Assembly (NCBI RefSeq): GCF_902713615.1
Contig: NC_052158.1
Location: forward strand, 43,611,159 to 43,675,158
Direction: 5' to 3'
Source: Scyliorhinus canicula
Taxonomy: Eukaryota
DNA length: 64,000 nucleotides
Below are positions 8,209 through 53,482 of this stretch, piece by piece; positions within the stretch are counted from its first letter, which is position 1, and each line of letters starts with the position of its first letter. Under the pieces are notes generated by a model. It was not told the origin of the DNA. It saw only the letters and a list, made by a program, of their open reading frames with translations, and searched no databases. Position numbers and translations under genes: made by a program.

Positions 8209-8480
8209 TGTATAGTATTGCATTCACACTGTATAGCATTGTGTCCTTGTGGGCTCTGTCTGTGAGCCATTGCGTGGCTCTGCCCACAGGGGGAGATGAG
8301 GAGCTTGTACAGGGCTCCACCCTCGGCTCCGCCCATGGCCCCTCCCACTACCGGAAGAATAAAGTGCTGCAGCCTTGTGAGTCTGCCCTCAGTTCTTCTG
8401 GTTGCAGGCAGGCTTAGTTGTAAGTCTATTAAAACCACTGTTTACTTCCTATCGTGTTTCGAGTAAATTGATGGTCACAT
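8209..8480 (+). mobile_element. Solo LTR (Gypsy-type)
   Basis: TG start, GC-box-like CTCCGCCC, TATA-position AATAAAG, ATTAAA signal and end AATTGATGGTCACAT, similar to the end of the LTR at 60458-60685. Confidence 0.6.
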
Positions 8481-8659
8481 AGTAAGTTAGATGGGAAGCC
8501 AGGTAACTAGATGAGGGAGAAAGGAATAGATGGGTCTGCTAATAGGGTGAGATAAAATGGGTAGAGAGAAAGCTGCTGTGGAGCATAGGCATCGAGAGAA
8601 TGTAGATGGGCTGAATTTTCTTTTCAGTGCTTTAAAAATTGGACTCAAGTTGCTCCTCC

Positions 8660-9480
8660 AATCTGTGTATGTGCTGATCCCACTTCTGTCCATCATCACT
8701 GCCTTGGATGCTGTGGGTCTTCCTCTTCTGATCTGCTGTCAAACACATCCGAGGCTACACATCCAACACTGATGTTGTCAGTTTGGAAGCCTCGGAGGAT
8801 GAAGAATGCTGTTCCCACACTAGAAATCTCTGTCAACGTTTACCAGGGGAACTGAGAACGCAGCTGCAATAAGTGACGTTTTATTCAGATGGGGAAAAAC
8901 GACAAGTTTAAATCCCCACCTGATCTGCTGCTCAAAGTCGCCTCCGTTTCCCCGGTCAGTTTCCCAAACTTCAGGAAACTCCTGTTACTGCAGAAATATT
9001 TGGATTGTCTGTGAGAGACGTCAATCAGAGAGCCCACCCACTCTGCCCATTCTCTCCTCTTCCTCTACCACAGCTGCTTCACTTCCTGTAGGGACTCAAA
9101 ACCAAGTCAGGAGATGGTGAGTGAAGGAGCACAATTTACAATCATTACATTGCACAATATCCACACTAATGTTCAGGCAGTCTGACTATCCTGTGGGCAA
9201 TCAGCTGTGGAAATGCCCCTTATGCTGTGTCAGAAGATCCAGCTCACAGACCTGTTTACTCGGTGCTTTGTGCTGAGCTGTTTGATTGGCTGTGTGTTGG
9301 ATATTCAGGGTGTTTATTGGAAGCATTTCCCTTCTGATTTACAGACTGAGTTTTGTTGATGGGTCATTGCTGAATATGAGAAGGTGAGGTGTAATTATCT
9401 GGGAGAGTCAGAGTGAGGATTCTCACTGATTTCCTATTGTTGAGTTGTGTGTGTGTGTTGTGAGCTGGTTACTATCCTGT
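8660..9480 (+). promoter_or_regulatory. Conserved 5' cassette of ZNF-A (upstream block, mini-exon, proximal intron)
   Basis: Paralogous to 41050-41860 (-), 51665-52150 (-) and 23735-24012 (-). Contains a CRE-like GACGTCA, a CCAAT-like TCAATCAG, CCCACCC, a pyrimidine tract and ETS CACTTCCTG. Confidence 0.7.
9074..9116 (+). other. 43-nt 5' mini-exon of ZNF-A ending in ATG
   Basis: Polypyrimidine tract plus CACAG acceptor, GTGAGT donor at 9117; same length in four copies. Confidence 0.75.
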
Positions 9481-9714
9481 GGACTGAATGGTCAGTTTTG
9501 TCTGTGTTGGGATCTGAATCTTTCCTGTTTTTTTCGAATACCTCCAAGACCTCCCACCCACTCTCTCTCTCTAACCTCCTCAGGAAAAAAGAAAAACTTG
9601 CACGACCACCAGATGTCCCAAAGCCCTTTACAGCCAATGAAATGCGATCACTATTGTAATTTAGGAAACATGGCAGCCGATGTGTGCACAGCAAGATCCC
9701 ACAAACAGCAATAT

Positions 9715-9985
9715 GTTAATGACCAGATGATCTTTTTTTTGTGATGTTTATTGATGGATTAATGTTCGTCAGGACAACATAACTCCCCTATTCCTCAAAA
9801 TAGTGCCATAGAATCTTTGACACCCACCTTTGAGAGGTCCAAAGTGGCCTTGGTTTAATATCGCATTTGAAAGATGACTCCTCTTCACAGTGGAGCACTG
9901 AAGTGTCAGGCTCTGTGTTCAAGACCTGCAGTGGGACTTGAACCCACAACCTTCGTGCTCAGGTGAGAGTGCTATCTCCTGAGGC
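9715..9985 (-). mobile_element. SacSINE1/Deu-type SINE
   Basis: Minus strand shows GAAGGTTGTGGGTTCAAGTCCCACT B-box head and Deu-like GATTCTATGGCACTATTTTGAGGAATAGGGGAGTT. Confidence 0.65.
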
Positions 9986-10289
9986 ACGATTGACAATCAA
10001 CCCAACCTCACAACCCTCTACGTCGGCACTCCTCCAATGTTATCTCTTCAGATTCCCGGTTTCAATCACTCCACCATCAGTGGCTGTGCTGCCTGGGTCC
10101 TTAGTTCAGGAACACACACTCTCCCCTTCTTTAAGATATTTTAAAAATCTGTCTCTTTGACCAAACATTTGGTCATCTCTCCTCTGTGGCTCACTGTTAT
10201 TATATCTGATAATTATATCTGATAATGCATCTTGATGTATTTTGTGACCTTTTCCCCTGTTATAGGTGCTGTACAAACTAAGTTATCGA

Positions 10290-10780
10290 ACCTTCTGCAA
10301 ATGGGAACAACTCTGTCAAAATCCTTCATGATTTTACACATCTCTAACAAATCTGCTCTTAACCTTCTCTGTTCTAAGGGCAACAATCCCAGCTTCTCAC
10401 ATCTATCCACATAATTGTAATCCATCAATCCTGGAGTCATTCTAGTAAATTTCTTCTGTACCCTCTTCTTCATAGAATTCATAGAATCCCTATTGAGTCT
10501 GCACTGACCTTCTGAAAGAGTAATCCACCCAAGCCTACTTCGCCGCACTATTTCTATGACCCTTTTACCTAAGCTACACATCCCTGGACCCTCGGGGACA
10601 ATTTAAAATGGCCAATCCACCTAACCTGCCCATCTTTGGACTGTGGGAATGAACTGGAGCACTTGGAGGAAACCCACGCAGACACAGGGAGAAAGTGCAA
10701 ACTCCACACAGTCACCCGAGGCCGGAATGGAGCCCAGGTCACTGGTGCTTTGAGGTGACAGTGCTAACCACTGTGCCACC
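10290..10780 (-). mobile_element. CR1 fragment (10290-10470) plus HE1-type SINE (10471-10780)
   Basis: RVQKKFTRMTPGL..EKLGLLPLEQRRLRADLLEMCKIMK; SINE head GGTGGCACAGTGGTTAGCAC on the minus strand. Confidence 0.8.
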
Positions 10781-11016
10781 ACGCCACCCACCTTCAAAAG
10801 TCGCTTGTTGAACATCCCCAGGCAGAATGAACCTCTCTCGCCAACAGGCAGACTGAATATAAAGTCTCAATGAGCAAACTGTCCAGCATCTTAATCTCTA
10901 ACACTTGGAAAGGCGCCATTAAATTCTTAAACTCGTTCACTGATGGGTAAAACTACACTAATGACACAATCTCACAGAGCGTCGATAGCCTATTTTACAC
11001 TCCACCCTCTGACTAT

Positions 11017-11665
11017 TGTCATGTGAGTGTCCATTTAAGAAAGATTTTGTCTCTTGTCATGTGACTTGTAGCACATTGGGCTGTGGCTGTGAGGTGAGAG
11101 GGGGGTACTAGTTTCAATTTAACTGCTTTGGACTGCAGAAGGAGAAAGAAGTGTTTTTCTCTGTTTTCATTTAAAAAGCTGTTCCAGTAAAAACCCAGTG
11201 GCTAACTACCTTCGTAACTTTAAAGATAGAGTTGCTTTCTGGAAGGTGTTTGAATCTGCTGGTTGGAACTGGATCAGAATTTCAGGAAAAGGACCAGTCC
11301 CATTCACATGAGAATACAGTGTGCTGGGCCACGTCCTTGAAAAGGGGTTTTGGTTTAATTAAATTTTGTTATTTAATTGGAACAGCTGAGGGGAAATTTG
11401 TTAAGTGTTATATACATAGATTACCATACCTGTGTGGTGTCTTTACGTTTGTAATTGATAAAAATTCTTGCTGTTTTATATATATATAATATATATATGT
11501 TAACTACATTCTTAGACTAAACCTTGTTTGGATTAAAGTGTCGAGGAAGTCCGATGAAACACACCTGCAATGAAAGCTTTTGTGCTCATCCTAGCCAAAT
11601 TCAACATAAAGGTTGTAGGTCAGGTGAATTTCATAGGTTTGGTGTTTCTAAGCCTTGGCCCATGA
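11017..11665 (+). mobile_element. Solo LTR in ZNF-A intron
   Basis: Starts TGTCATGTGAG, ends CCTTGGCCCATGA; absent from the paralogous introns, and intron homology resumes at GTCTTTTCCATTGCC. Confidence 0.55.
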
Positions 11666-11917
11666 AGTCTTTTCCATTGCCCTCGGAGCCTGGGAGATGA
11701 CAGGTAGGGCAAGTAGAGAGGAGGGGGGTTGGAGAGGAAAGAAAGTAGCCATTGAGGAGTCAGCCCTTTCAGCAAAGGAGGAGAGGGAGTTGGAGGAAAT
11801 CATATTTCCTTTTCCTGTTTTACAGATGGATTGCACTGTACTACACCAGAGAGTACATAGAGGATAGGCACTGCAGATAGATCCTGACCGTCACCCAAGA
11901 AACAACTGCACAACCAC

Positions 11918-12853
11918 ATGGAAGAGAATCCATTCCAGAGTGAGGTGAGCAACCAAGAATGGACACAGTCACCGACACTCTTCAATCAGCCACACTTTCA
12001 CATAGCTGAGAAGCTGTTCAGGTGCGAGATGTGTGAAAAGTCATTCTCAAAGTCCTGGAACCTCCACAGACACCGGCGCATGCACACAGGGGAGAAACCA
12101 TTCACGTGCGAGGTGTGTGACAAATCGTTTTCACAATTATCGACACTCCGCACACACCGACGCATTCACACAGGGGAGAAACCCTTCACGTGCGAGGTGT
12201 GCAACAAATCATTCTCACATTCATCAACCTTCCGCGAGCACCAACGTGTTCACACGGGGGAGAAACCCTTCAAGTGTGAGGTGTGCAACAAATCATTTTC
12301 TGACTCATCGACCCTCCGCGTACACCAACGTATTCACACAGGGGAAAAACCATTCCGATGCGAGGTATGTAACAAATCGTTTGCACAGTTATCAACCCTC
12401 CGTGCACACCAACGCATTCACACCGGGGAGAAGCCAGTCAAGTGTGAGGTGTGTGACAAATCTTTCTCACAGTTAGGGAGCCTCCTGGTCCATCAGAAGA
12501 TCCACACAGGGGAGAAACCCTTCAAGTGTAATGTTTGCGATAAGGCTTTTGTAAGATCTTCAAGCCTCCTGATTCACCAGATGATTCACACAGGGGAGAA
12601 ACCCTTCAGATGTGAATTTTGTGAAATGGCTTTCATCCAATCCTCCGATTTACTGAGGCACCAGAGGATTCACACAGGGGAGAAACCCTTCAAATGTGAG
12701 GTATGCGACCAAGCCTTCACGCAGTTATCGACGCTTGTAGAACACCGCCGCATTCACACTGGGGAGAAACCATTCCCATGTGATGTGTGCAACAAATCTT
12801 TCTCAAGGTCATCGTACCTCCTTCTCCATCGGAAAATTCACACAGGGGAGTAA
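11918..12853 (+). CDS. ZNF-A: C2H2 zinc-finger protein, 311 aa, 10 intact fingers, no effector domain
   Basis: Open ORF with C-x2-C-x12-H-x3-H repeats and TGEKPF linkers. Terminal exon acceptor TTTTACAG| at 11826; start MEENPF. Confidence 0.92.
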   Translation: MEENPFQSEVSNQEWTQSPTLFNQPHFHIAEKLFRCEMCEKSFSKSWNLHRHRRMHTGEKPFTCEVCDKSFSQLSTLRTHRRIHTGEKPFTCEVCNKSFSHSSTFREHQRVHTGEKPFKCEVCNKSFSDSSTLRVHQRIHTGEKPFRCEVCNKSFAQLSTLRAHQRIHTGEKPVKCEVCDKSFSQLGSLLVHQKIHTGEKPFKCNVCDKAFVRSSSLLIHQMIHTGEKPFRCEFCEMAFIQSSDLLRHQRIHTGEKPFKCEVCDQAFTQLSTLVEHRRIHTGEKPFPCDVCNKSFSRSSYLLLHRKIHTGE

Positions 12854-13110
12854 CTCTTCAAGTATGATCCTGAAGCATCAGTAGATCCACACTAGTGAGG
12901 AAACATTGTGAGGTGTGTGACAAGGCTTTCACACAGTCAGCGTATCTGCTGATCCATCATCAAACTCTCACATGAGGTACAGTATCGGTGTGAGTTCTGG
13001 AATAAAATCTTCACTCTTTTCTCTGTCCACTTGGAATAGCGAACCCATGTGGGAGACAAACTCTTCCGGTGTGACATGTGTCAAGATTGTTTTTGCTCCA
13101 CCATACACAA
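12854..13110 (+). pseudogene. Decayed zinc fingers in ZNF-A 3' UTR
   Basis: Frameshifted TGTGAGGTGTGTGACAAGGCTTTCACACAG and GGAGACAAACTCTTCCGGTGTGAC after the stop codon. Confidence 0.8.
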
Positions 13111-13119
13111 CCATCTCCA

Positions 13120-13450
13120 CACAGACTTGGGGCCCAGTGACCGGCTTCTTTTATATTGAACAGCCGAGCTCTAATTTTAATGTTGTATTCCCTTGTTCTG
13201 GACTCTCCAACGAGAGGACTAGTTTCTCTCTAACTACTCTATCAACTCATTTAATCATCTTAAACACCTCAATTAAATTACCCCTTTATCTACATTCAAA
13301 GGAACACAATCTCAGTCTGTACTTCCTGTCCTCATTATTTAACCCTTTTATCCCCAGGAATATTCTGGTGAATCTACGCTGCACTCCCTCCAAGGACAAT
13401 ATATCCTTTCTGAGGTGAAGTGGCCAGACCTGAACACAGTTCTTCTGATG
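13120..13450 (-). mobile_element. CR1 3' fragment
   Basis: Minus strand AGAAAGGATATATTGTCCTTGGAGGGAGTGCAGCGTAGATTCACCAGAAT is typical of CR1. Confidence 0.75.
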
Positions 13451-18629: not shown

Positions 18630-18676
18630 TACACAGGTATGAATACATATATATCATATATATATGATATATATAT
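18598..18676. repeat. (TA)n/(CA)n microsatellite
   Basis: Direct reading. Confidence 0.9.
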
Positions 18677-19007
18677 GGCAGCATGGTAGCATGGTGGTTA
18701 GCATAAATGCTTCACAGCTCCAGGGTCCCAGGTTCGATTCCCGGCTGGGTCACTGTCTGTGTGGAGTCTGCACGTCCTCCCCGTGTGTGCGTGGATTTCC
18801 TCCGGGTGCTCCGGTTTCCTCCCACAGTCCAAAGATGTGCGGGTTAGGTGGATTGGCCATACTAAATTGCCCGTAGTGTCCTAAAAAGTAAGGTTAAGGG
18901 GGTTGTTGGGTTACGGGTATAGGGTGGATACGTGGGTTTGAGTAGGGTGATCATTGCTCGGCACAACATCGAGGGCCGAAGGGCCTGTTCTGTGCTGTAC
19001 TGTTCTA
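18677..19007 (+). mobile_element. Young HE1-type SINE
   Basis: Near-identical to 43891-44226, 54536-54870 and 59321-59629. Confidence 0.92.
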
Positions 19008-19184
19008 TATGTGAGTATTTTGCACATGAATATTTTGCTGAATGAAGAGGCCTCGCTCCTTCCTTTGTAACATAACCTGTCCATTGACAGGGGATCCCCT
19101 CTGCACCACTTTGATGTTTGTTGCTCGAAACTGGGAATCCGCAGATTGGAGGGGAGAGAAGGGAAGGGGGGGTGAGGAGGTTAA

Positions 19185-23734: not shown

Positions 23735-24012
23735 TGATCCACCAGGGGTGACAGCACAGTGACCCCACAGATCAGGTGGGGATTTAAACTTGTCATTGTC
23801 CCGTCTGAATAAAACCTCACCTATTCCAGCAGCTGTCTCAGTTCCCCCGGTAAACGTTTGACAGAGATTTCTCGTGTAAGAATAGCATTCTTCATCCTCA
23901 GAGGCTTTCAAACTGACAACATCAATGTGGGATGTGTAGCCTCCGATGTGTTTGACAGCAGATCAGAAGAGGAAGACCCACTGCGAAGGCAACAATGACG
24001 TGCAGTGCCGGG
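23735..24012 (-). repeat. Truncated inverted copy of the ZNF 5' cassette (continues at 24825 after a solo LTR)
   Basis: CAGATCAGGTGGGGATTTAAACTTGTCATTGTCC..GCTTTCAAACTGAC matches 41600-41850; TGGGATCAGCACA resumes at 24825. Confidence 0.8.
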
Positions 24013-24834: not shown

Positions 24835-25380
24835 ACAAGCACAGGAGAGGGGGGACATGCGGGAGAGAGGGGGGGGGCACAGGAGAGAGAGGAGGATACA
24901 CAGGGGAGAGAGAGGGGGCAACACAGGAGACAGGGGGGAAAACAGGAGAGAGAGGGAGACATACAGGAGAGAGAGGGAGAAACACGAGAGGGGAAACAGG
25001 AGAGAGGGCGAAACACAGGAGAGAGGGAGCAATACAGGAGAGAAAGGGGGGCACACATGAGAGAGAGGAGGGACATGAGAGAAAGGGACACGAGAGAAAG
25101 GGGCACATGGGAGAGAGAGAGGGACACAGGAGAGAGAGAGGGACACAGGAGAGAGAGAGAGGGACACAGGAGAGAGAGAGGGACACAGGAGAGAGAGGGG
25201 GGACACAGGAGAGAGAGGGACTCAGGAGAGAGAGGGACACAGGAGAGAGAGGGACACAGGAGAGAGGGGGACACAGGAGAGAGAGGGGGAAACACAGGAG
25301 AGGGGGACACAGGAGAGAGAGGGACGAGGGAGAGGGACACCGGAGAGAAGGGGGCACAGGAGGGAGGAACACGAGAGGGT
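24835..25380 (+). repeat. Purine-rich minisatellite, unit ~GGGACACAGG(AG)n
   Basis: More than 20 imperfect 16-20 bp units; most regular at 25110-25320. Confidence 0.9.
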
Positions 25381-28600: not shown

Positions 28601-29759
28601 GGACAGGGAGATACTGGTGAAGGGATTGGGAACAAGAGGGAGAATGTGCTTATGGGGAGAATGCTGGGAAGTGATACCAGGTATGAAGATCTAGTCATAC
28701 CCCGCACAACTGAAAGGTTCCTCCCCTGTGCGATTCCTCCCAGTGGGGTTGGAAGACACCAGGAAAACCCAACACAAATCACACACTCAAAAGATTTCCC
28801 ATCCATGTAGCTGTCCTTGTGTTAATAGAGCTTGTAACGGATGCACCCTGGGTGTTAAGAGATCTTTAGAATTCCCTCCTTGAACCTCTCTGTCCCTTTA
28901 TCTCTCTCCCTCCTTTCAGGTCCTCTTTAATTCCCACCTCTTTGACCATATTTTTGATCATCCCCTCCTAATATCTCCTTTGTCTTGGTATTAATTTTTC
29001 TCTGATTACGTGTCTATGAAACACTTAGGGATGTTTGACTATATCAAAGTGCTCTATAAATACAAGCTGTCATCCTCTCCCATTCCCTCCAAACTCAGGG
29101 TACTGACTTGAAGTATAATCTGTGACATTGATTGTCCTCTAAGTGCTCTTTTCGAGTGGCTATTCAGGGTGTTGGCCCAGACAGGGAATGTTGAGAGACA
29201 ATGGAGGCTGTCACAGCCGAGACACATCCTGCCCTCCCTCCCTCCCTGCCTTCCCAGCTGGGCTCACTGAGGAACAGGATTCCCGGCTGATTCTCCCCCT
29301 CCATAGACCAGAGATACTGAGTCCCTCCATTACTACCCCAGGAATGGCTCCTCCCCTGGGGCTTGTGCTGGTAGATCAGAAGCTGAAACTTTCTAATCAC
29401 TGAGTATCTGATTGTCTTCTTGGTCAGAGTGAGAGTCAGTGAGTGACTTGTACCTGACGCTGCACTGAAAGGATGCTGAGTTTATACAGCAGCTTCTATA
29501 CAGATTCATGTCTTCTTTTAGTGATGTTTGGCCACCTGGTCAAAGGTTAAGTTGACCTTATCGAAACGATTGTTCTGATGGTGAGGGAGGTTGGAGACAG
29601 ACACTGCTGAGACAGACACTGCTTTGGAAGGACAGCTCCCCTGTGCGAGCACTGGAGGGTAAACATCACAGACAACTCTCAGTGTAAGGGAAGCAGGTGA
29701 GCCAGCTCCTAGTCCGTGTGGAAATGTCGGTGAGAGAGTAGGTGGAACAATCCCGACAC

Positions 29760-30129
<370 letters not shown>

Positions 30130-30918
30130 TCATTTGTCATGCATGAATGGATTCTCTCGTGTGTGTATGTGTCGGTGTGCACGGAGATTCGATACCTGTG
30201 AGAATGATTTGTGACACACCTCACACTTGAAAGGTTTCTCGCCTGTGTGAACCCGTCGGTGTGAGCGGAAGGTCGATGAGTCCGAGAATGATTTATCACA
30301 CACCTCACATGTGAACGGCTTCTCCCCGGTGTGAACGCGACGGTGTTGCACGAGCGTTGACGGATGTGTGAAAGCTCGGTCACACACCTCACACTTGAAA
30401 GGTTTCTCTCCAGTGTGAATCCTCTGGTGACACAAGAGATGACAGTATTGGGTGAAACCCATCTCACAAACCTCACACCTGAAAGGTTTCTCTTCGGAGT
30501 GAATATTCTGGTGTATCAGGAGCCTTGTAGATGTCGCAAAGGCTTTTCCGCAAACCTCACACTTGAAGGGTTTCTCTCCTGTGTGGACTGTCTGATGGCG
30601 TAGGAGACTTGATGATAACGTGAAGCCTTTGTCACATACCTCACACATGAACAATTTCTCCCCTGTATGAATGCGTTGGTGAGCACGGAGGATCGATGAC
30701 TGTGAGAATGATTTGTCGCACACCGCACACTTGAATGGTTTCTCCCCTGTGTGTGTGCGTTGGTGTGTGCGGAGAATCGATGACCGTGTGAATGATTTGT
30801 CACACACCGCGCACTTGAATGGCTTCTCCCCTGTGTGAACGCTTTGGTGTTGCAGCAGTGTTGATGACCGTGTGAAGGCTTGGTCACACACCTCACATGT
30901 GAATGGTTTCTCTTCCAT
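30130..30918 (-). CDS. ZNF-B: C2H2 zinc-finger protein, 262 aa from MEEKPF, 9 fingers
   Basis: The ORF track start at 30993 is GTG; the first ATG is at 30918. Terminal exon acceptor at 31387. Confidence 0.9.
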   Translation of the reverse strand: MEEKPFTCEVCDQAFTRSSTLLQHQSVHTGEKPFKCAVCDKSFTRSSILRTHQRTHTGEKPFKCAVCDKSFSQSSILRAHQRIHTGEKLFMCEVCDKGFTLSSSLLRHQTVHTGEKPFKCEVCGKAFATSTRLLIHQNIHSEEKPFRCEVCEMGFTQYCHLLCHQRIHTGEKPFKCEVCDRAFTHPSTLVQHRRVHTGEKPFTCEVCDKSFSDSSTFRSHRRVHTGEKPFKCEVCHKSFSQVSNLRAHRHIHTRENPFMHDK

Positions 30919-32040
30919 GTCGCTGGACAGCTCAGGTTCAAAAGAAACGCTACTGAGTTCGGATATCTCATGAACCTGCGGAGCCCTCCTCACAGACCTC
31001 TCACTTGAACAGCCTCTCCTGTAGGAATGAGTCAGTGGTTCATGAGGCTCGATGAATGATTGAAGCTCTCACCTCATTTGGAGTCCACTCACACTTCTTC
31101 CCAGCATCACCCTTACCAAACACCCACAGCAGAACCTTCAGAAAGGTTGATTCTGATGGAAGGCTCCACACCACTGACCAGTTTCCGATCTGATGATATG
31201 TCAAAGCTCCCCTGACCCGACCGATTTCCAGATGATGGTTTCACTGCCCAACCTTCTCTCTTGAGCAATGCTGTGAAGGGACTGGATGTCTTCTCACAGT
31301 TGTGCAGTTGTTCCTTGGGTGATGGTCAGGATCTATCTGAGGTGTCTATCCTCTCTGTATTCTTTGGTGAAGGGCGGTGCAATCTTTCTGTAAAACAGGA
31401 AAAGGAAACATGATTTCCTCCAATTTCCTTTCCTTTACTGAAGGGGCTGTCTCCTCAGAGACTGTTCCACAGTGAGTGACAGTCTGTTATTCCCCTGTGT
31501 GAAGGATCAGATAAAAGTCCTTCCTTTTTCCTCACTTGACTGTCACACACCCTCTGTTTCCAGTAGGGACACTGGATACTGACCAGGAGCAGACAATATG
31601 GCTACTTTCTTTCCTCCACCCAGACCCCCATCTTCCCAGGCAATGGAAAAGACAGTTGGGCGGAGTGTAAAATGGGCTATCAATTCACTGAGAGCTCCAG
31701 TCATGCTGGCAAAGACCAGTTTTACCCTGAGTGTATATGTTTAATATAAAAAACACTCAGGAGAAATGTTAATTTAGTGGAATTTTTCTGAAATTATTTG
31801 AAGAAAACATACTGGGCAGGAAGTGCCAGAAGCCAAAGAGAATATTTCTTCAGTGTAGCTGATTGAAGGGCTCTGGTTTATCCTGGGAAATTAGATGCAC
31901 TGCGCTCACTCAAACTGCACATCCCAAATTCAACTCTCACACACAGAACTGGGCAAACTATCAAATATAAGCCCAGGCTTTTGGGAAAGGCCGAGGCCTT
32001 CAGGTAAAATTTTTAAAGAAGGCATTAAAAGACATTTCAA

Positions 32041-38557: not shown

Positions 38558-38571
38558 TTGAAGACATCCAT
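36514..38571 (-). CDS. Uninterrupted L1 ORF2 3' part (partial RT plus CCHC), 685 codons from an ATG inside the TSD
   Basis: DAEKAFDRVEW, GTRQGCPLSPLLF, YADDLLLY and CTRCSGSPANHAHMFWAC with no stops; endonuclease and N-terminal RT motifs are missing. Confidence 0.75.
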   Translation of the reverse strand: MDVFNVRRLLNVIMMPAIEGEAEIVVALDAEKAFDRVEWGYLWEVLGRFGFDEGFIRWVRPRYEAPMACVATNRRRSEYFRLYRGTRQGCPLSPLLFALAIEPLAMALRDSERWRGLVRGGEEHRVSLYADDLLLYVADPVGGMPGVMELLAEFGTFSGYKLNLGKSEVFVVHPGDQEEGIGRLPLRRAGESFRYLGVQVARDWGTLHKHNFTRLVDQMEEEFRRWDMLPLSLAGRVQSVKMTVLPRFLFLFQCLPIFIPRAFFRRVTSSILSFVWAHGTPRVRRVFLERGRDRGGLALPNLLGYYWAANVSMVCKWMMEGGGAAWKRMEMASCRGTSLGAMVTTPLPLSPKRFTTSPVVAATLRIWGQWRRHRGETGGSMEAPLGGNHRFIPGNTDGGFRGWQRAGISKLRDLFIGGRFAGLGELEDKFGLPQGNMFRYLQVKAFARRQVEGFPLLPSQGTMDRVLSGVWVGEGKVSDIYKVMQEVEESSVEELKAKWEEELGEQIEDGTWAEALERVNSSSSCARLSLIQFKMLHRAHMSGTRMSRFFGGEDRCTRCSGSPANHAHMFWACPALEEFWKGVAGTVSRVVGSRVKPGWGLAIFGVAVEPGVQEAKEAGVLAFASLVARRRILLQWKDARPPSVETWISDMAGFIKLEKVKFALRGSIQGFYKRWQPFLDFLAQR

Positions 38572-39104
38572 GTTATTCACTTCAAACACTCCACGTTGTG
38601 AAATTAAATTTAATCCATTTTGAAATTTGTGGGACAGAATCAAAATAAAAACATGGAAACTTTCAGATTGTGCTAAAACCCCAAACATTGTCCTTCAGGG
38701 AAGGGAACCTGCTCAATTGCCGGACCTGGTCTACATATGACTCCAGTCCCACACAACACGGTTGAGTCTGAACTGCCCTCTGAAATGGTCCAGCAAACAA
38801 TGATAAACAATCAGTTCAAAGTCCAATAATAAGAGGAAAGTCAGACAGACCTGGACAATGCTGGCTTTGTGTCAGAATAAGATTAAGGTGCTCTCAGCCC
38901 AATGAACTCTGTAAAGTCTCTCTCACCAAGGTCTGAGGACTAGTACTCGGAGAGCTGCCCCGCAGACTGGTCAAGTGACAGTGATACTCACTGAATGGTT
39001 TCAATCCGGAATCATCCCAGACTCCTCCCTCAACATCCCTGGGAATGTCCCATCCCACTGGCAGGTGCGATTCCTCAATATTGTATCCATGGAAAGGGCA
39101 ACAA

Positions 39105-40865: not shown

Positions 40866-41418
40866 CTTTTCACGTTTCTGACATTACAACAGTGATAACA
40901 CTTCAAAACTACTTAAATGGCTGTAATGTGCTTTGAACATCTGGTGGTCGTGAAAGTATATATAAATATAATTCTTCATTTACGAGGAGGTTACTGAGAT
41001 GGGGGAGGGATTTGAAAAGACAGTACAGAGATCCCATCGCACAGCTGACCGTTCAGTCAGCAGGGTAATAACAGCTCCCAACACACACAACTCAACAATA
41101 GGAAATCAGTGAGAATCCTCACTCTGCCCCTCCCAGATAATTCCCCCTCACCTTCTCATATTCAGTAATGACCCATCAACAAAACTCAGCCTGTAAATCA
41201 GAAGGGAAATGTTTCCAATAAACACCCTGAATATCCAACACACAGCCAATCAAACAGCTCAGCACAAAGCACCGAGTAAACAGGTCTGTGAGCTGGATCT
41301 TCTGACACAGCATAAGGGGCATTTCCACAGCTGATTGCCCACAGGATAGTCAGACTGCCTGAACATTAGTGTGGATATTGTGCAATGTAATGATTGTAAA
41401 TTGTGCTCCTTCACTCAC

Positions 41419-41461
41419 CATCTCCTGACTTGGTTTTGAGTCCCTACAGGAAGTGAAGCAG
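41419..41461 (-). other. 43-nt 5' mini-exon of ZNF-B (cassette 41050-41860)
   Basis: Identical to 9074-9116; GTGAGT donor. Confidence 0.75.
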
Positions 41462-43890
41462 CTGTGGTAGAGGAAGAGGAGAGAATGGGCAGAGTGGGTG
41501 GGCTCTCTGATTGACGTCTCTCACAGACAATCCAAATATTTCTGCAGCAACAGGAGTTTCCTGAAGTTTGGGAAACTGACCGGGGAAACGGAGGCGACTT
41601 TGAGCAGCAGATCAGGTGGGGATTTAAACTTGTCATTGTCCCATCTGAATAAAACCTCACTGATTGCAGCTGCTGTCTCAGTTCCTCCTGGTAAACGTTT
41701 GCCAGAGATTTCTAGTGTGGGAATAGCATTCTTTGTCCTGGGAAGCTTTCAAACTGACATCAGTGTGGGGTGTGTAGCCTCGGATGACAGTAGATCAGAA
41801 GAGAAAGACTCACAGCATCCAGGGCATTGAAGACGTGCAGTAGTGGGATCAGCACATACGCAGGAGAGAGGGAAACAGAGGAGTGAGCGACACGAGATCG
41901 AGGGACACTGGAGGGAGGGACACAGCAGCAGCACAGGAAGGAGAGTGTAATTTACTTTCCTCTGCTCTCTTCTTCCACCTATGAATTCTCCTTTCTCTCC
42001 AATGTGGTCAACACTTATATGCCCTTTGAAATGGCCTAGCTAGCCTCTCAGTTCAAGGGGCAATTCGAGATGGGCAATATATGCTGGCCCATCCGGCTCA
42101 TTGTCCATGTGGAGTTTGCACATTCTCCCCGTGTCTGCGTTGGTTTCGCCTCCACAACCCAAAGATATGCAGGGTAGGGCTATTGGCCACGCTAAATTGC
42201 CCCTTAATTGTAAAAAATTAATTGGGTCCTCTAAATTTTACCAAAAAAAATAATTGCTGGCTCAGCCAGCGATGCCCACATCCCATGAATGGAAACAAAT
42301 ACCCACTTCCCATTGCTCGATCTGCTATCTTCCCTGTCTCTCTTTCCTCCTCCATATCTGTCTCCTATCTTGCTCTTCTTCCAGCCATCAGGAAAAGCTT
42401 GCCACTCTTATTATTCCCTCTGTAACAGTGGTCAGTGCTTCCTTTCCTTGTTCTGTCATGGGCTGTGGACATTGCTGGCACGGGCCATCCCTAATTGCCT
42501 TTAATCTGAGTGGTTTGCTGGGCCAATTCTGAGTCAACCACATTGCTGTGGGTCTGAAATCACATGGAGGCCAGACCAGGTCAGGGTGGCAGATTTGCTT
42601 CCCTAAAGGACATTTACAAAAATCAAAAATGATTTCATGGCCATGGACTTTTAATGCAAGATTTTGTACTGACTGTCATCGAGGTAACGTTCCACAGCAG
42701 TTAGACCATTCACAATATGATTCATGGATTTCTGAAAAAGAGCACGTGCCAAAGTTATCCCAAATGGATGTCTCCGATAACAAAAGTCTCCATGATAAGT
42801 AGCGATTGTGACTCTGCAGCCACATTCGTTTGTAGATATACCTGTGAAATGTCTATTTTGCTTAATGTTTGGCCTCTTTAGTGTCCAGCAAATATATCTA
42901 AAATAAGCGGTAGAGGATAGTAATCTGCACACTTTCCTGGGTTAATTGCATAATGTAAGATGTATAAAATTATGAGGGGCATAAAAAGAGTAGTCAAGAA
43001 GAAACGTTTCCCCTTGTTGGAGGGGTTAATGATCAGGGAGTATAGCTTTAAGGTAAGAGGCAGGAGGTTTATAAGGGATGTGAGGAAAAGCTTTTGGGAG
43101 TCTGGAACTCACTGTCTGGAAGGCAGAGACCCTCATAACATTTAAGAAGTATTTAGATGTGCACTTGCGGTACCCAGGCATACAAGGCAATGGTTTGAAA
43201 ATGAAAAAAAAATTAAAATCGCTTATTGTCACAAGTAGGCTTCAAATGAAGTTACTGTGAAAAGCCCCTGGTCGCCACATTCTGGCGCCTGTTCGGGGAG
43301 GCTGGTATGGGTTGTTTCTGACCGGCGCAGGCACAATGGGCTGAAGGGTCTTTTCTGTGCCCTCTACGACTGTAATTGTGGTTTTAAAATCTCCACATAT
43401 TCTTACTGAACAATCAGGCTTCAACACAGTAACCAATCATCGATAGTAATGGGTTCAATGACTCCTGTCAGAACTAATCTTTCAAGTTCTTCTTCGACTC
43501 CCCGGGTCACTGTCCGTGTGAAGTTTGTACATTCTCTCTGTGTCTGTATGCGTCTCACCCCCACAACTCAAAGATGTGCAGGTTCGGTGGATTGGCCACA
43601 GTAAATTGCCCCTTAATTGGAGAAAAAAGAATTGGGCACTTTAAATTTTAAAAAAAGTTCTTCTTCGACTTTTGGCCTGATGGCTTATGGTACGGTTCTT
43701 GCTTTGTATATTTAGGTGCACTGTTTGGCTTAATTTGAGTTTAACTCCAATTCCTGTCATCGAGACCAGTGACTCTCAAACACCTTTGTATACTTAAAAA
43801 GTAGTTGCAGGTCATGTGTAGATGAGGGTAGTGCAGTTGATGTAGTCTACATGGATTTCCGCAAAACCTTTGACAAGATTGTCAAGTTTA

Positions 43891-44226
43891 GGGCAGCACG
43901 GTAGCATGGTGGTTAGCATAAATGCTTCACAGCTCCAGGGTCCCAGGTTCGATTCCCGGCTGGGTCACTGTCTGTGCGGAGTCTGCACGTCCTCCCCCTG
44001 TGTGCGTGGGTTTCCTCCAGGTGCTCCGGTTTCCTCCCACAGTCCAAATATGTGCGGGTTAGGTGGATTGGCCATGCTAAATTGCCCGTAGTGTCCTAAA
44101 AAGTAAGGTTAAGGGGGGGGATTGTTGGGTTCCGGGTATAGGGTGGATACGTGGGTTTGAGTAGGGTGATCATTGCTCGGCACAACATCGAGGGCCGAAG
44201 GGCCTGTTCTGTGCTGTACTGTTCTA
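43891..44226 (+). mobile_element. Young HE1-type SINE
   Basis: Full length; near-identical to 18677-19007. Confidence 0.92.
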
Positions 44227-44469
44227 TGTCCTAGATCCACATGGGAGACTTATAAAGAAGGCAAATGCGCGAGATACAGGGGAATTTAGCACGGTAGATT
44301 CAAAATTGGCTTAGCTGCAGGAAACAGACGGCTTCATAGATAGATAGAATTTACAGTGCAGAAGGAGGCCATTCGGCCTATCGAGTCAGCACCGGCTCTT
44401 GGAAAGAGCACCCTACCCAAGGTCAACACCTCCACCCTATCCCCATAACCAAGTAACCCCACCCAACAT

Positions 44470-48910: not shown

Positions 48911-49019
48911 CAGAGCTGGGATCGAACCTGGGACCTCGGCGCCGTGAGGCAGCAGTGCTAACCACTGAGCTACCGTGCAGCCCCCAAATGGCTTCTCACT
49001 TATGTTAATATGTCGGTGT

Positions 49020-49368: not shown

Positions 49369-50763
49369 TTACTCCGTGTGGAGCCTCTGATGGAGTAGGA
49401 GGTAGGACGACCTCGTGAAGGATTTGTTGCAAACCTTGCATGTGAACAGCTTCTCCCCAGTGTGGATACGTTGATGGGCGCGGAAGTTCCATGACTCCGA
49501 GAATGACTGGTCGCACACCTGGCATGCAAATGGTTTCTGTCCAGTGTGTTTGTGTTGGTGTGTGCGGAGGGCTGATGCCCATCGGAATGATTTGTCACAT
49601 ATCTCACACATGAATGGTTTCTCCCCAGTGTGGATGCGTTGATGGACGCGGAGGGTCGATGAGTCCGAGAATGATTTGTCGCACATCTCACATGCGAAGG
49701 GCTTCTCTCCTGTGTGAGTCCTTTGGTGTCTCAGGAGGGCCGAAGACTTCACAAAAGCTTTGCCACAAAACTCGCACCTGAAGGGCTTCTCCCCCGTGTG
49801 AGTCCTCTGGTGTCTCATGAGATCGAGGGAATGGGTGAAAGCCATTTCACACACATCACACTTGAAGGGTCTCTCCCCTGTGTGAATCCTCTGGTGCACC
49901 AGGAGGTTGGAAGATGTCACAAAAGCTTTATCACAAACCTCACACTTGAAGGGTTTCTCCCCTGTGTGGATCCTCTGGTGAGTCTGGAGATCAGAGAAGC
50001 GGGAGAAAGCTGCCTGACACACCTCACACCTGAACGGTCTTTCCCCCGTGTGAATCCTGTGGTGTATCAGAAGGGTCGAAGACTTCACAAAAGCTTTATC
50101 ACAGACTTCACACTTGAATGCTTTCTCCAGTGTGTGAGTGCGTTGGTGGCTGCGGAGTGTTGATGAATCCAAAAATACTTTGATGCACACCTCGCATGTA
50201 AATGGTTTCTCCCTGGTGTGAAGGAGTTTATGCGTGCGGAGGTTCGATGATTGCGAGAATGATTTATCACACACCTTGCATATGAATGGCTTCACGCCTG
50301 TGTGAATGCGTCGGTGCACACAGAGGTTCGACGAGTTCGAGAACGATTTGTCACACACCTCGCACGTGAATGCTTTCTCCCCTCTGTGGATGCGTTGATG
50401 GACGCGGAGGGACGATGAATGCATGAATGATTTGTCGCACACCTCACAACTGAACGGTTTCTCCCCTGTGTGAATGCGTTGATGTGCGAGAAGGGATGTT
50501 GACTGCAAGAATGATTTGTTGCATACCGTGCATGTGAATGGTTTCTCCCCTGTGTGAATGCGTTGATGCATGCGGAGGTTCGATGACTTTGTGAAGGATT
50601 TGTCGCACACCGCACATTTGAATGGCTTCTCCCCAGTGCGAATGTGTCGATGATTCATGAGCATCAATGACTGTGAAAATTTGGTCACGCCCCAAACTGT
50701 AACAGTTTCTCTTCCATGTGGCTGTTCTTGTGTTAACAGTTGTACAACAGGTGCACCTTGCAT
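49369..50763 (-). CDS. ZNF-C: C2H2 zinc-finger protein, 464 aa, 15 intact fingers
   Basis: Open ORF from ATG 50763 (AAACATGC); terminal exon acceptor at 51195. Confidence 0.9.
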   Translation of the reverse strand: MQGAPVVQLLTQEQPHGRETVTVWGVTKFSQSLMLMNHRHIRTGEKPFKCAVCDKSFTKSSNLRMHQRIHTGEKPFTCTVCNKSFLQSTSLLAHQRIHTGEKPFSCEVCDKSFMHSSSLRVHQRIHRGEKAFTCEVCDKSFSNSSNLCVHRRIHTGVKPFICKVCDKSFSQSSNLRTHKLLHTREKPFTCEVCIKVFLDSSTLRSHQRTHTLEKAFKCEVCDKAFVKSSTLLIHHRIHTGERPFRCEVCQAAFSRFSDLQTHQRIHTGEKPFKCEVCDKAFVTSSNLLVHQRIHTGERPFKCDVCEMAFTHSLDLMRHQRTHTGEKPFRCEFCGKAFVKSSALLRHQRTHTGEKPFACEMCDKSFSDSSTLRVHQRIHTGEKPFMCEICDKSFRWASALRTHQHKHTGQKPFACQVCDQSFSESWNFRAHQRIHTGEKLFTCKVCNKSFTRSSYLLLHQRLHTE

Positions 50764-51299
50764 GTTTGGAGATTCTATGGGCCTATAATGTCCTCTTCAT
50801 ACACCTCACACTTGAACAGCCTCTCACCTGCAGGAATGAGTCAGTGGTTCATGAAGCTCGATGAATGATTGAAGCTCTCACCACACCACTCTCCACTCAT
50901 TTCTTCCCAGCCTCACCCTGATTGATCACTCACAGCCAAACCTTCAGAAAGATTGGTTCTGATGGAAGGTTCCACATCACTGACCGGTTTCAGATCTGAT
51001 GATATGTCAAAGCTTCCCTGACCCGACTGATTTCCAGATGATGGTTTCACTGCCCAACCTTCTCTGTGTTGAGCAATGCTGAGAAGGGACTGGATGTCTT
51101 CCCACAGTTGTGCAGGTGTTCGATGGGTGATGATCAGGATCTCTCTGTGGTGTCTATCCTCTCTGTATTCTCTGGTGTAGTACGATGCAATCCTTCTGTA
51201 AAACAGAAAAGGGAAACATGATTTCCCTCTCTTCCTTTGCTGAAGGTAACACTTTAAATCCAAGTTCCAGCTTTTGGAAAAAGCCGAGGCTGTCTTAAG

Positions 51300-51440: not shown

Positions 51441-51722
51441 AGTAAATCCTCCTGTTCCTTTCTCTCCTCATGAGCTTGTCTAGTTTCCCCTTTAAGGCAT
51501 TTATGTTATTCACCTCAAACACTCCATGTTGTGAAACTGACTTTAATACATTTGCAACATTGTTGTATAGAAACAAAATAAAAACCGTTATATCTCTACA
51601 AGCATTACACTATCCAGCGACGGTACATCACAAGAATATTCCTCGACACTGGATATTCATTTTTGAACATTAGTGTGGATATTGTGCAATGTAATGATTG
51701 TAAATTCTGCTCCTTCACTCAC

Positions 51723-51765
51723 CATCTCCTGACTTGGTTTTGAGTCCCTACAGGAAGTGAAGCAG
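51723..51765 (-). other. 43-nt 5' mini-exon of ZNF-C (cassette 51665-52150)
   Basis: Identical to the A and B mini-exons; 527-bp intron to the finger exon. Confidence 0.75.
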
Positions 51766-53482
51766 CTGTGGTAGAGGAAGAGGAGAGAATGGGCAGAGTG
51801 GGTGGGCTCTCTGATTGACGTCTCTCACAGACAATCCAAATATTTCTGCAGTAACAGGAGTTTCCTGAAGTTTGGGAAACTGACCAAGGAAACGGAGGAG
51901 ACTTTGAGCAGCAGATCAGGTGGGGATTTAAACTTGTCATTGTCCCATCTGAATAAAACCTCACTTATTGCAGCTGCTGTCTCAGTTCCCTGGTAAACTT
52001 TGACAGAGATTTCTAGTGTGGGAACAGCATTCTTCATCCTCGGAGGCTTTCAAACTGATAATATCACTGTGGGATGTGCTTGACAGCAGATCAGAAGAGG
52101 GAGACCCACAGCATTCAAGGCAGTGATGATGTACATGGTGTGATCAGCACAGGGGAGGGACACAGAAGAGAGTTGACCCAATGATCAGGCATTGTCTCTC
52201 TTCCTTGGAGAGTGACTTGGTGACTCAGTGAGTGTGCTGGGGCTCATTGTGTGAGTAGATGCCCCAGGATTTGATATCTTACAGCCCTGCCGTGATCAGG
52301 GGCCGCCTGCTGTGGAGGTTCAGCTCTAATTTCTGAAACTCAATCAGCCATTCCCACTATTCTCCTGGGATGTCTTGAACTGTTCACTTCTCCAGGGTTG
52401 CCTGAACGTCCAAAAAACCCGAGTGTAATGAAGAGCCTTTCAACTGACATCAGTGTGGGATATGTAGCCCAGTGTGGGATTAACATATGCACAGTAGAGA
52501 GAGAGTATTTTACTCTGCTCTCCTCTTTTCCTCTGCCTATTATCTCTCCTTCCTCTCCCACCCATCTCTCTTCGCTCTCTTTGATCCTCTTCCCTACTTC
52601 TCTTTCCTCTTAAATCCACTCTATCTCCTTCTCTTTCCTCCTATCTCTCCTCCCCCATCTCTCTCCTAACTCATCCTTCAGCAATCGGCAGAAACTCATC
52701 ACTCTCATTATTCCCATCTGGGCCGTGGTTATTTCCGTGGTTGGTAGCAGCTTCCTGAATGATGTTTAACAAACCAGTGATAAAGATCACAAACGTTCAA
52801 TTTACACTCAATGACATTTAAAGTTCCTGATCTGGTCAACTTCAGCCAGATTAGGTTGATAAAGCCGACAGAAGACAGTGTAACCTCTCGAACACAAGCT
52901 GTGTATTTGTGATTGTTGCATATTTGGCAAACTGAAGCAAACTTTTTTAAAATAGCCTATGACCAATGTTTTATTTAAGGTGGTACATTGTGATCTGATT
53001 GACTTCATGACCAGTGCAGTTTGTGTTAATCCTACAGGATAATTTCTTCACTCATTTTATAACATGTTTGTGTTTCAATAAATGGTAGGCGGGGTTTGTA
53101 CAGGGAGTCCAGATTCTGAGGAATTATTTGTGTGGCCCTGACAACAACTTTAATCCATGATCATGGAATAATCCATCTGGAGTCGGTGTGAACCCCCAAC
53201 CTTGTTCTGTGAGTCAGAGGGTTGTGGGTTCAAGTCCCACTCCAGGACTTGAGCACAAGAAATCCTGGCTGACACTCCAGTGCAGTACTGAGGGGTGGAA
53301 GAAATTCCAGAGATAGGGAGGGGAGAGGCCAAGGTGGGATTTGCAAACAAGGTAAGAAACCTCACTAAAACAAACATTGAGCTTTCCTGGGAAGAGTGGG
53401 TTTATTCCTCAAGTTTTATTCCTGGCAGTCCGTTAGAACTGTCCCCAAATACAACTTTCATGAATAAATGAAAGCAGAATGG

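What the first reader, a model, noticed from the sequence alone, without database searches (positions are those of the whole stretch)
8901..9322. 421/422-bp identical 5' cassette shared by diverged, inverted ZNF paralogs
By manual alignment, 8901-9322 (ZNF-A, +) equals the reverse complement of 41213-41634 (ZNF-B, -) except at one base (8987). ZNF-C (51665-51935) is ~98% identical over ~270 bp. The starts of the A and B finger exons are only ~84% identical, and the 3' UTRs appear more diverged still. The block is non-coding: upstream motifs, the 43-nt mini-exon and ~200 bp of intron. This pattern suggests gene conversion, or recent copying of a regulatory cassette, keeping control and splicing uniform while the finger arrays diversify. 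Extreme purifying selection is the alternative.
Basis: partly seen in the sequence, partly recalled or inferred. Interest (0 to 1): 0.72.

Follow-up and report, generated by a model that had tools for sequence, protein, structure and literature searches.

The report
Gene-conversion tract in shark ZNF promoters
Two old, oppositely oriented zinc-finger genes of a catshark share a 422-base non-coding start region that is letter-identical but for one base, most likely because related copies overwrite each other there (gene conversion); the same piece occurs in roughly 50-100 exact copies genome-wide, so it is a family-wide case of a known process.

Summary
Window 8901-9322 (+) equals the reverse complement of 41213-41634 at 421 of 422 bases, with the one mismatch at 8987. 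The homologous flanks are only 83-89% identical, and 0 of 200,000 permutations reproduce such a run. The block lies in an ~830-bp 5' module (promoter-like DNA, non-coding leader exons, part of an intron) shared by three finger-only C2H2-ZNF genes: A (+), B (-) and C (-). A fourth copy is a relic. A-B divergence is K2P 0.09-0.18 at every other homologous place and 0.0024 in the block.

The best reading is recent non-allelic gene conversion:
- The high-identity edges differ between pairs (A-B from 8901, B-C from about 8872).
- A and B share two minority letters (9231, 9306) against the family majority.
- C's differences include CpG decay.

New here: in an independent DNA run, a contig exactly equal to 8984-9185 has about 85 times single-copy depth. 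The block is therefore kept uniform, or was recently spread, across roughly 50-100 loci, not just A and B.

No transposon ends were found. A link to a ZNF-promoter-carrying hAT element noted elsewhere in this genome could not be tested. The TSS and the 43-nt mini-exon are not established. This is a known process and a moderately interesting family-wide case.

The parts
8658..9500 (+). 5' module of ZNF gene A: promoter-like DNA, leader exons and the start of the intron. It is homologous to B, C (in part) and D (in part).
   Evidence: Self-BLAST and MAFFT alignment
8901..9322 (+). Near-identical tract, copy A (the finding). It is 421/422 to B and carries the minority letters C at 9231 and 9306.
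41213..41634 (-). Near-identical tract, copy B. The private G lies opposite 8987.
41045..41871 (-). 5' module of ZNF gene B.
51664..52151 (-). 5' module of ZNF gene C, cut off at the equivalent of 9175. Its core, 51664-51938, is 98.5% to A and 98.2% to B.
23768..24010 (-). Relic copy D: the upstream part of the module only. It breaks at the equivalent of 8927 and has no finger exon downstream.
8894..8900 (+). 5' edge of the A-B tract: a 2-bp indel plus two substitutions private to A. B, C and D agree with each other here.
9074..9116 (+). The donor has weak RNA-like support. The ATG is not in frame with the fingers.
   Evidence: (X1 record 2 stops matching at 9116)
9345..9383 (+). Putative leader exon 2 (AG|...AAG|GT). 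An upstream ATG at 9376 opens a 20-codon uORF, closed at the same TAG in A and B. This is the bin with the most sense RNA reads and the highest DNA copy number.
11826..12853 (+). Gene A last exon: leader 11826-11917, then ORF 11918-12853 (311 aa, C2H2 fingers only).
30130..31387 (-). Gene B last exon (leader plus finger ORF; ATG at 30912). It lies about 10 kb from its 5' module because of LINE insertions in the intron.
49369..51195 (-). Gene C last exon(s): leader, then a 464-aa finger ORF at 49369-50763.

Best explanation
The block is the proximal promoter, non-coding leader and first-intron part of a lineage-specific, finger-only C2H2-ZNF gene family of a catshark. Earlier notes of this scan name the species as the small-spotted catshark.

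Genes A and B are old duplicates in opposite orientation, 32 kb apart. A double-strand break in one 5' module was repaired using a paralogous module as template (non-allelic gene conversion). This overwrote at most 422 bp (8901-9322), or at least 335 bp if 8987 marks an edge. On the 5' side the tract stops at a cluster of mismatches and a 2-bp indel.

Similar events with other end points link B and C. Judging from read depth, they link roughly 50-100 loci genome-wide. The 5' module therefore evolves in concert while the finger arrays diverge.

- **Shown:** the identity pattern, its significance, the pair-specific edges, the shared minority letters, the high genome-wide copy number of the exact core, and transcription of gene A.
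- **Inferred:** the repair mechanism, the promoter role, the exon model, and any benefit of uniform regulation.
For: 1. The tract is 421/422 identical with sharp edges; 0 of 200,000 permutations match it.
2. Every other homologous A-B segment is old. K2P is 0.12 upstream, 0.087 downstream, 0.14 in leader exon 3 and 0.18 in a transposon fragment shared by both introns, against 0.0024 in the core. No other exact match longer than 46 bp exists between the gene units.
3. In the upstream flank the four copies form a star (private changes 17, 15, 12 and 9; no site groups A with B). In the core, A and B share C at 9231 and 9306, where all or nearly all laid contigs of three runs read G. This is discordant history.
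4. Edges differ by pair. A-B begins at 8901; B-C is already identical from about 8872 (66-bp exact run, alignment). A single constrained element would give one common edge.
5. Two of C's four core changes remove CpGs (8940; 8952-8953). Core CpG o/e is 0.21. This is neutral-looking decay after copying.
6. In DNA run X8, a contig exactly equal to 8984-9185 has depth 357.6, against 3.4-6.9 for unique contigs of the same stretch. The donor pool is therefore large.
7. At 9306, the depth of the window's own letter in X8 is 7.1, about two copies. This fits A and B both being real.
8. Precedent exists: HBB-to-HBD conversion tracts span the basal promoter (PMC4041002), and GENECONV finds short tracts among poly-ZF paralogs (PMC2604467).
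Against: - Only three and a half copies could be aligned, and no other species could be compared, so conservation by selection is not formally excluded.
- In the 275 bp shared with C, the differences are 1 (A-B), 4 (A-C) and 5 (B-C). These counts are too few to separate the pairs statistically.
- Copy number comes from summed k-mer depth of contigs, which the tool warns is not a true copy number.
- At 9231 no contig carries the window's letter; only one RNA read does. Independent support for the A/B variant is therefore thin.
- There is no GC-bias signal: GC is 47% in both the core and the upstream flank.
- A ZNF-promoter-carrying hAT transposon of similar copy number (about 130-210) is noted elsewhere in this genome. 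It could be the source of the exact copies; this was not tested.
Confidence: 0.6

Rival explanations
1. A mobile carrier is the source. The exact high-copy sequence belongs mainly to a young non-autonomous transposon that captured a ZNF promoter, exon 1 and fingers (the 'Pack-hAT' noted elsewhere in this genome). A, B and C would then be either such elements, or resident genes whose 5' modules were overwritten from these transposon copies.
For: - My depth estimates are of the same order: about 85 exact copies, and about 120-275 at 90% likeness or more.
- All four copies in the window begin at about the same 5' point, 8658-8670.
- Copy D sits without a finger exon.
- Unit C is only ~2.8 kb long, close to the 2.46 kb of that element.
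Against: - No TIR plus 8-bp TSD brackets any unit or the core, and hit counts equal those of shuffles. Inverted repeats are only weak short pairs.
- There is no common 3' terminus; the 3' regions are decayed fingers at ~73% identity.
- The flanks on both sides of the core are collinear and homologous at 83-89%, so the core did not insert independently.
Its sequence could not be compared with this window, and a blank sequence look-up means nothing.
- TIRs and TSDs of copies this old could have decayed beyond my thresholds.
Confidence: 0.15
2. Purifying selection alone. The block is an ultraconserved promoter and leader element in which almost every base is constrained in every family member, with no copying between loci.
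For: - The core is also 98-98.5% identical in C, and exact in roughly 50-100 copies.
- It holds promoter-type motifs: a TTTAAA at 8907, a CRE-like ACGTCA at 9018, and inverted CCAAT boxes at 9285 and 9316.
- It is transcribed on the sense strand.
Against:
- The edges of high identity differ between pairs (8901 against about 8872).
- A and B share two minority letters against the family majority inside the block. This points to common recent descent of that segment, not convergence.
- C has lost the 3' 147 bp of the block altogether, and D lacks nearly all of it.
- C's changes are CpG decay.
Confidence: 0.1
3. Assembly or polishing artefact. The two copies were made alike by collapse or by short-read polishing of a repeated sequence.
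For: - The core is highly repeated in the genome, which is the setting in which polishing can homogenise copies.
- No contig in three runs carries the window's letter at 9231.
Against: - Both copies sit in collinear, clearly different flanks within a few hundred bases, and they differ at 8987.
- Polishing towards the majority would have given G at 9231 and 9306, but A and B carry the minority C.
- At 9306 the window's letter has depth 7.1 in DNA run X8, about two single-copy equivalents. One raw RNA read carries C at 9231.
- The window contains no N and no gaps.
Confidence: 0.05

Closest known systems
HBB-to-HBD (beta/delta-globin) 5'-end gene conversion; also the classical G-gamma/A-gamma globin conversion (the latter from my own knowledge)
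   Same: A conversion tract between neighbouring paralogs that covers upstream regulatory DNA and the start of the gene. It carries the basal promoter from one copy to the other, while the rest of the genes stays diverged (PMC4041002).
   Different: In the globins the tract includes coding exons and involves two genes. Here the tract is entirely non-coding, and the same sequence is shared by roughly 50-100 loci. The two partners examined are inverted and 32 kb apart.
Short GENECONV tracts among lineage-specific poly-zinc-finger paralogs (Emerson and Thomas 2009)
   Same: The same kind of gene family (fast-diversifying tandem C2H2 arrays), and short conversion tracts are detected between paralogs (PMC2604467).
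   Different: Those tracts were sought and found in coding alignments. Here the finger exons show no tract at all (no exact match over 31 bp), and the conversion is confined to the 5' non-coding module.
Concerted evolution of multigene families (rDNA, histone and U snRNA arrays; inverted hsp70 pairs of Drosophila). From my own knowledge, not checked here.
   Same: Many copies are kept identical by repeated non-reciprocal exchange. Inverted orientation does not prevent it.
   Different: In those families the whole functional unit is homogenised. Here only the control or leader part is, while the product-coding part diverges.
Gene-fragment-carrying hAT ('Pack-type') transposons noted in this same genome (earlier notes s1-278439 and s1-243503)
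   Same: They carry a ZNF promoter and exon 1 at a copy number of the same order.
   Different: No TIRs or TSDs were found here, and the flanks are collinear between copies. Sequence identity to that element was not testable.

Membership tests
Non-allelic (interlocus) gene-conversion tract | A sharply bounded segment far more alike between paralogs than the homologous flanks, beyond chance | tested here: met
   Core 99.8% against 83% and 89% in the flanks. K2P is 0.0024 against 0.09-0.18. 0 of 200,000 permutations match.
Non-allelic (interlocus) gene-conversion tract | The history of the tract conflicts with the history of the flanks (phylogenetic discordance) | tested here: met
   The flank is star-like among A, B, C and D, with no site grouping A with B. 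In the tract, A and B share minority C at 9231 and 9306 against the family majority G. Only two informative sites, so support is modest.
Non-allelic (interlocus) gene-conversion tract | Paralogs within a species are closer to each other than to their orthologs in a sister species | not testable with these tools
   No other shark genome or further copies could be fetched.
Non-allelic (interlocus) gene-conversion tract | Both partners exist as assembled (not a collapse) | tested here: inconclusive
   Diverged collinear flanks, one mismatch, and depth 7.1 (about 2 copies) for the window's letter at 9306 in X8. However, contigs cannot link the core to its flanks, and none carries 9231C.
hAT / Pack-type DNA transposon | Terminal inverted repeats with 8-bp target-site duplication at the ends of the unit | tested here: not met
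   0 hits at the unit ends. One chance-level hit per unit in a broad scan, equal to shuffles. Only weak inverted pairs. Old copies could have decayed ends.
hAT / Pack-type DNA transposon | Copies share both termini and occur at unrelated sites away from ZNF genes | tested here: inconclusive
   The 5' start is shared by four copies, and D lacks a finger exon. There is no shared 3' terminus.
Constrained (ultraconserved) regulatory element | The same boundaries of conservation in all copies, and equal conservation across species | tested here: not met
   Boundaries differ by pair (8901 for A-B, about 8872 for B-C). C lacks 9176-9322 and D lacks everything beyond 8927. The cross-species part was not testable.
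C2H2 poly-zinc-finger genes without effector domain | Tandem C2H2 fingers with TGEKP-type linkers; no KRAB, SCAN or BTB | tested here: met
   Pfam finds only C2H2-type families in A (311 aa), B (260 aa) and C (464 aa). The open frame upstream of C's fingers has no family.
RNA polymerase II promoter plus leader exon | A mapped transcription start and splice junctions in RNA | tested here: inconclusive
   Sense-strand RNA reads cover 8928-9398, most densely 9242-9398, and drop in 9399-9555. One paralog contig stops matching at the donor 9116. No junction rows were shown for 9116/9383 to 11826. Motifs only. Not a CpG island (o/e 0.21).

The most novel reading that the evidence does not exclude
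Roughly 50-100 or more finger-only ZNF genes of the catshark keep an exactly identical non-coding control and leader module of at least 200 bp, while their DNA-reading finger arrays diverge freely: a 'one common switch, many different readers' design. It would be maintained by frequent conversion confined to the 5' module, and possibly seeded or boosted by a transposon that carries the same promoter. A mobile element would then act as a donor that rewrites the promoters of resident genes.
Probability: 0.2. Interest if true: 0.65.

Novelty: new member of a known kind. Interest (0 to 1): 0.4.

Why it matters
Fast-evolving zinc-finger clusters are usually studied for how their fingers diversify; how their expression is kept coordinated is much less clear. 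This case shows that only the control and leader part of such genes is homogenised, down to letter identity across roughly 50-100 loci, while the coding part diverges. If confirmed genome-wide, it gives three things:
- A natural system for asking whether conversion or selection keeps a large transcription-factor family under common control.
- A warning for dating duplicates or calling conserved non-coding elements in shark genomes, because promoter similarity would badly underestimate gene age.
- A possible link between gene-fragment-carrying transposons and promoter turnover.

As a single A/B tract, it is an ordinary example of a well-known process.

Tried and rejected
1. **More copies through proteins.**
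   - The whole-protein word search was swamped by finger arrays of all vertebrates, and no shark protein appeared among the 120 listed.
   - The exact proteins of A, B and C are not on record.
   - A short ORF inside the core, used as a tag, found nothing.
   - The non-finger N-terminus of A found nothing.
2. **Metagenome scan.** A 30-nt core tag gave 0 hits in the metagenome contigs. In the window it matches exactly three times: A, B and C.
3. **Large representative protein search: not run.** The operators flagged it as costly. A finger query would be swamped again, and the only non-finger frame (133 aa upstream of C's fingers; no Pfam family) is disrupted in B and deleted in A, so it is probably non-coding.
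4. **Transposon ends.** Two TIR+TSD scans with shuffle controls and an inverted-repeat search gave only chance-level hits (one search timed out). The single A hit (8739/11253) lies inside sequence that is continuously homologous among the four copies, so it is not an insertion edge.
5. **Known RNA families in 8300-10000.** None; the one match has E 0.95.
6. **tRNA scan of the window.** None.
7. **GC-biased conversion signal.** None; GC is 47% in both the core and the upstream flank.
8. **The mini-exon ATG as start codon.** Rejected. Spliced to 11826 it meets a stop at once in every copy.
9. **Earlier-notes look-ups.** The sequence look-up and the search for TIR details of the Pack-hAT came back blank.
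10. **Joined spliced model.** The exon-2 ATG was joined to the first ~75 nt of exon 3 only inside one script, to read the 20-codon uORF.

Full report
**1. The observation**

Window 8901-9322 (+) and the reverse complement of 41213-41634 differ at one base in 422: position 8987, A against G (sequences read). The window contains no N.

The two blocks are the centre of a longer homology, 8658 to about 9680 against 41871 to about 40870. Identity by segment:

| Segment | A-B identity |
|---|---|
| Upstream flank 8670-8900 | 83% |
| Block 8901-9322 | 99.8% |
| Downstream 9323-9500 | 89% |

The 5' edge is abrupt. A has a 2-bp indel and two substitutions at 8894-8900, then 86 and 335 identical bases on either side of 8987. 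The 3' edge is softer, with differences at 9323, 9345, 9369, 9390 and onward. I scattered the 65 differing columns at random over the 843 aligned positions 200,000 times. None gave a 422-bp stretch with at most one difference; the longest was 192.

**2. What surrounds it**

The window holds three C2H2 zinc-finger genes:

| Gene | Strand | 5' module | Last exon | Finger ORF |
|---|---|---|---|---|
| A | + | 8658-9500 | starts 11826 | 11918-12853 (311 aa) |
| B | - | 41871-41045 | starts 31387 | ends 30130 |
| C | - | 52151-51664 | starts 51195 | 50763-49369 (464 aa) |

- B's last exon lies about 10 kb from its module because LINE elements, one with a 724-aa reverse-transcriptase frame, sit in the intron.
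- Pfam finds only C2H2-type domains in all three: no KRAB, SCAN or BTB.
- C shares the module only up to the equivalent of 9175.
- A fourth copy, D (about 24010-23768, -), has only the upstream part, breaks at the equivalent of 8927, and has no finger exon behind it.
- Earlier notes of this scan (s1-200271, s1-195961) place the genome in a catshark, and other notes name the small-spotted catshark. They describe a very large finger-only ZNF family. I did not verify the species myself.

**3. The block is non-coding**

Spliced to 11826, that ATG meets a stop almost at once in all copies.

A second candidate leader exon is 9345-9383. Its ATG at 9376, spliced to 11826, opens a 20-codon upstream frame. 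That frame is closed by the same TAG in A and B. The finger ORF of A starts at 11918 in a good Kozak context.

The block has a TTTAAA at 8907, a CRE-like ACGTCA at 9018, and inverted CCAAT boxes at 9285 and 9316. It is not a CpG island: CpG o/e is 0.21 and GC is 47%, the same as the upstream flank. No Rfam family matches.

**4. Sequencing runs**

Twenty runs of one organism hold parts of gene A. I laid four of them on 8300-13000 at 90% likeness.

*Copy number*
- In the probable DNA run X8, contigs unique to this stretch have depth 3.4-6.9.
- A contig exactly equal to 8984-9185 (202 nt, no differences) has depth 357.6. That is about 85 single-copy equivalents, range roughly 50-105.
- Summed depth at 90% likeness or more is 157, 458, 510, 787 and 1155 for the five bins from 8614 to 9398. 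It is 72 for 9399-9555 and 437 for the leader part of exon 3.
- The tool warns that summed depth is not a copy number, so these are rough figures. Still, the 5' module is clearly a family-wide, many-copy sequence, and its centre is letter-identical in roughly 50-100 places.

*Family majority against A and B*
- At 9231 every laid contig in three runs reads G, where A and B both have C.
- At 9306 nearly all read G. In X8 the window's own C has depth 7.1, about two copies.
- A and B therefore share two minority letters inside the block.

*Transcription*
- A-specific finger-exon contigs are 4-7 times deeper than A-specific intron contigs in X1 and X4. They are only about 1.6 times deeper in DNA run X8. 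Gene A is therefore transcribed.
- Raw oligo-dT RNA reads (X23) lie on the sense strand over 8928-9398, most densely over 9242-9398, and almost vanish in 9399-9555.
- One contig of a paralog stops matching exactly at 9116, the mini-exon donor.
- No junction rows for the leader introns were among those shown, so the start site and exon model remain open.
- An alternative model fits the RNA profile at least as well as the mini-exon model: a start near 9300-9345, downstream of the two CCAAT boxes.

**5. Conversion, selection, transposon or artefact**

*For conversion*
- All other homologous A-B segments are old. K2P is 0.12 upstream, 0.087 downstream, 0.14 in leader exon 3 and 0.18 in a transposon fragment present at the same place in both introns. 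The block is at 0.0024.
- No other exact match above 46 bp exists between the gene units.
- In the upstream flank the four copies form a star, with no site grouping A with B. Inside the block, A and B share the two minority letters.
- The edges are pair-specific. A-B identity begins at 8901, whereas B and C (and D) already agree from about 8872 (66-bp exact run). This points to separate events, not one constrained element.
- Two of C's four differences destroy CpGs, as expected for neutral decay after copying.

*Against selection alone*
- Constraint would be needed on every one of 335 consecutive bases.
- The edges differ between pairs.
- C has lost the 3' 147 bp of the block, and D has lost nearly all of it.

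*Against an artefact*
- The flanks are collinear but diverged, and there is one mismatch.
- A and B carry minority letters. Polishing would have imposed the majority.
- Depth of the 9306C variant corresponds to about two copies.

*Transposon rival*
That is the same order as my depth estimate.
- I found no TIR plus 8-bp TSD around any unit or around the core. Hit counts equalled shuffles, inverted repeats were only weak pairs, and there is no common 3' terminus.
- The core lies between collinear homologous flanks, so it did not insert on its own.
- I could not compare that element's sequence with this window. It therefore remains possible that transposon copies make up part of the exact copies, or serve as conversion donors.

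**6. Mechanism, and what is shown**

*Shown*
- The identity pattern and its significance.
- The old age of the rest of the genes.
- Pair-specific edges and shared minority letters.
- The high genome-wide copy number of the exact core.
- The non-coding nature of the block.
- Transcription of gene A.

*Inferred*
- A break in one 5' module was repaired from a paralogous module (synthesis-dependent strand annealing or a similar route).
- Heteroduplex extension stopped at the mismatch and indel cluster 8894-8900.
- Repeated events across a large donor pool keep the module uniform.
- The block acts as promoter and leader.

Whether uniform regulation is selected for, or is a by-product, is unknown.

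**7. Comparison with what is known**

Conversion tracts that carry a basal promoter from one paralog to another are documented for HBB and HBD (PMC4041002). Short tracts among poly-ZF paralogs were detected with GENECONV (PMC2604467). In the *HMA4* cluster of *Arabidopsis halleri*, conversion acts on the coding sequences instead (PMC3749932). A whale-shark genome paper mentions C2H2 domains only in general terms (PMC8455134). My searches found no description of this shark family or of a 5'-restricted tract in ZNF genes, but the library is not complete.

The case is a new member of a known kind. Its unusual side is that homogenisation is confined to the non-coding 5' module and reaches letter identity in roughly 50-100 loci.

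**8. Limits**

Only the copies in this window could be aligned. All attempts to fetch further copies or other species failed. I left the large protein search unused on purpose. The exon-2 ATG was joined to the start of exon 3 only inside one script, to read the short upstream frame.

**Verdict**

- Observation: confirmed.
- Interpretation: partly supported.
- Best explanation: gene conversion within family-wide concerted evolution of the 5' module (0.6).
- Interest: 0.4.

Noticed in passing
window 9376-9383 spliced to 11826-11885 (A); equivalent in B, 41152 / 31387 onward: The candidate leader exon 2 ends ...ATGAGAAG|GT. Joined to exon 3, it opens a 20-codon upstream ORF (MRRW.../MRRK...). The same TAG closes it in A and B. 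In C that codon is GAG, and the frame stays open for about 100 codons (ORF 50913-51314, no Pfam family).
   Followed up: partly
window 8728-8738 and 8920-8930: An 11-bp direct repeat, CTGATCTGCTG, followed by a similar ...CAAA, sits 192 bp apart. The second copy lies at the start of the identical tract, exactly where relic D breaks off (equivalent of 8927). It may be a microhomology used in the rearrangement.
   Followed up: no
window 10498-10811 and 8300-8456: Extremely high-copy repeats in gene A's intron and just upstream of its module. Summed depth in DNA run X8 is about 2,000,000 and about 113,000, against about 4 for unique DNA. These are probably SINE-type elements. A tRNA-like SINE head is also visible about 400 bp downstream of C's stop codon; ARAGORN calls no tRNA there.
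   Followed up: no
window 18674-19008, 43889-44227, 54537-54870, 59327-59631, 53796-54005: A dispersed ~335-bp repeat. Three copies are 96% identical to each other and the others 86-92%. This is a young SINE-like family, useful as a yardstick for young-repeat identity in this window.
   Followed up: no
window 36514-38688 (-): A 724-aa open frame with a reverse-transcriptase domain (RVT_1, E 1e-23) inside B's 10-kb intron. It is a fairly intact LINE, and it explains why B's 5' module lies so far from its fingers.
   Followed up: partly
window 60712-63780: Remains of an LTR-type retroelement. There is a gag-like frame with a CCHC knuckle (60712-61554, +) and RT (62157-62657, +). RNase H plus integrase lie on the opposite strand (62882-63742, -), so the element is rearranged or nested.
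   Followed up: partly
window 24845-25367: A purine-rich tandem repeat of 17-19-bp units, about 25 copies at 74-76% matches. It creates long spurious ORFs on both strands.
   Followed up: no
window 12854-13170; 29690-30129; 48900-49368: Behind each gene's stop codon lie decayed zinc-finger remnants, about 73% identical between A and B. The arrays have been shortened by stop or frameshift mutations, and the 3' UTRs are former finger-coding sequence.
   Followed up: partly
window 8614-8927: In the raw RNA run, a few reads lie on the opposite strand just upstream of the block (first mate on +, depth about 1.7-2.0). This is a faint hint of divergent transcription from the module.
   Followed up: no
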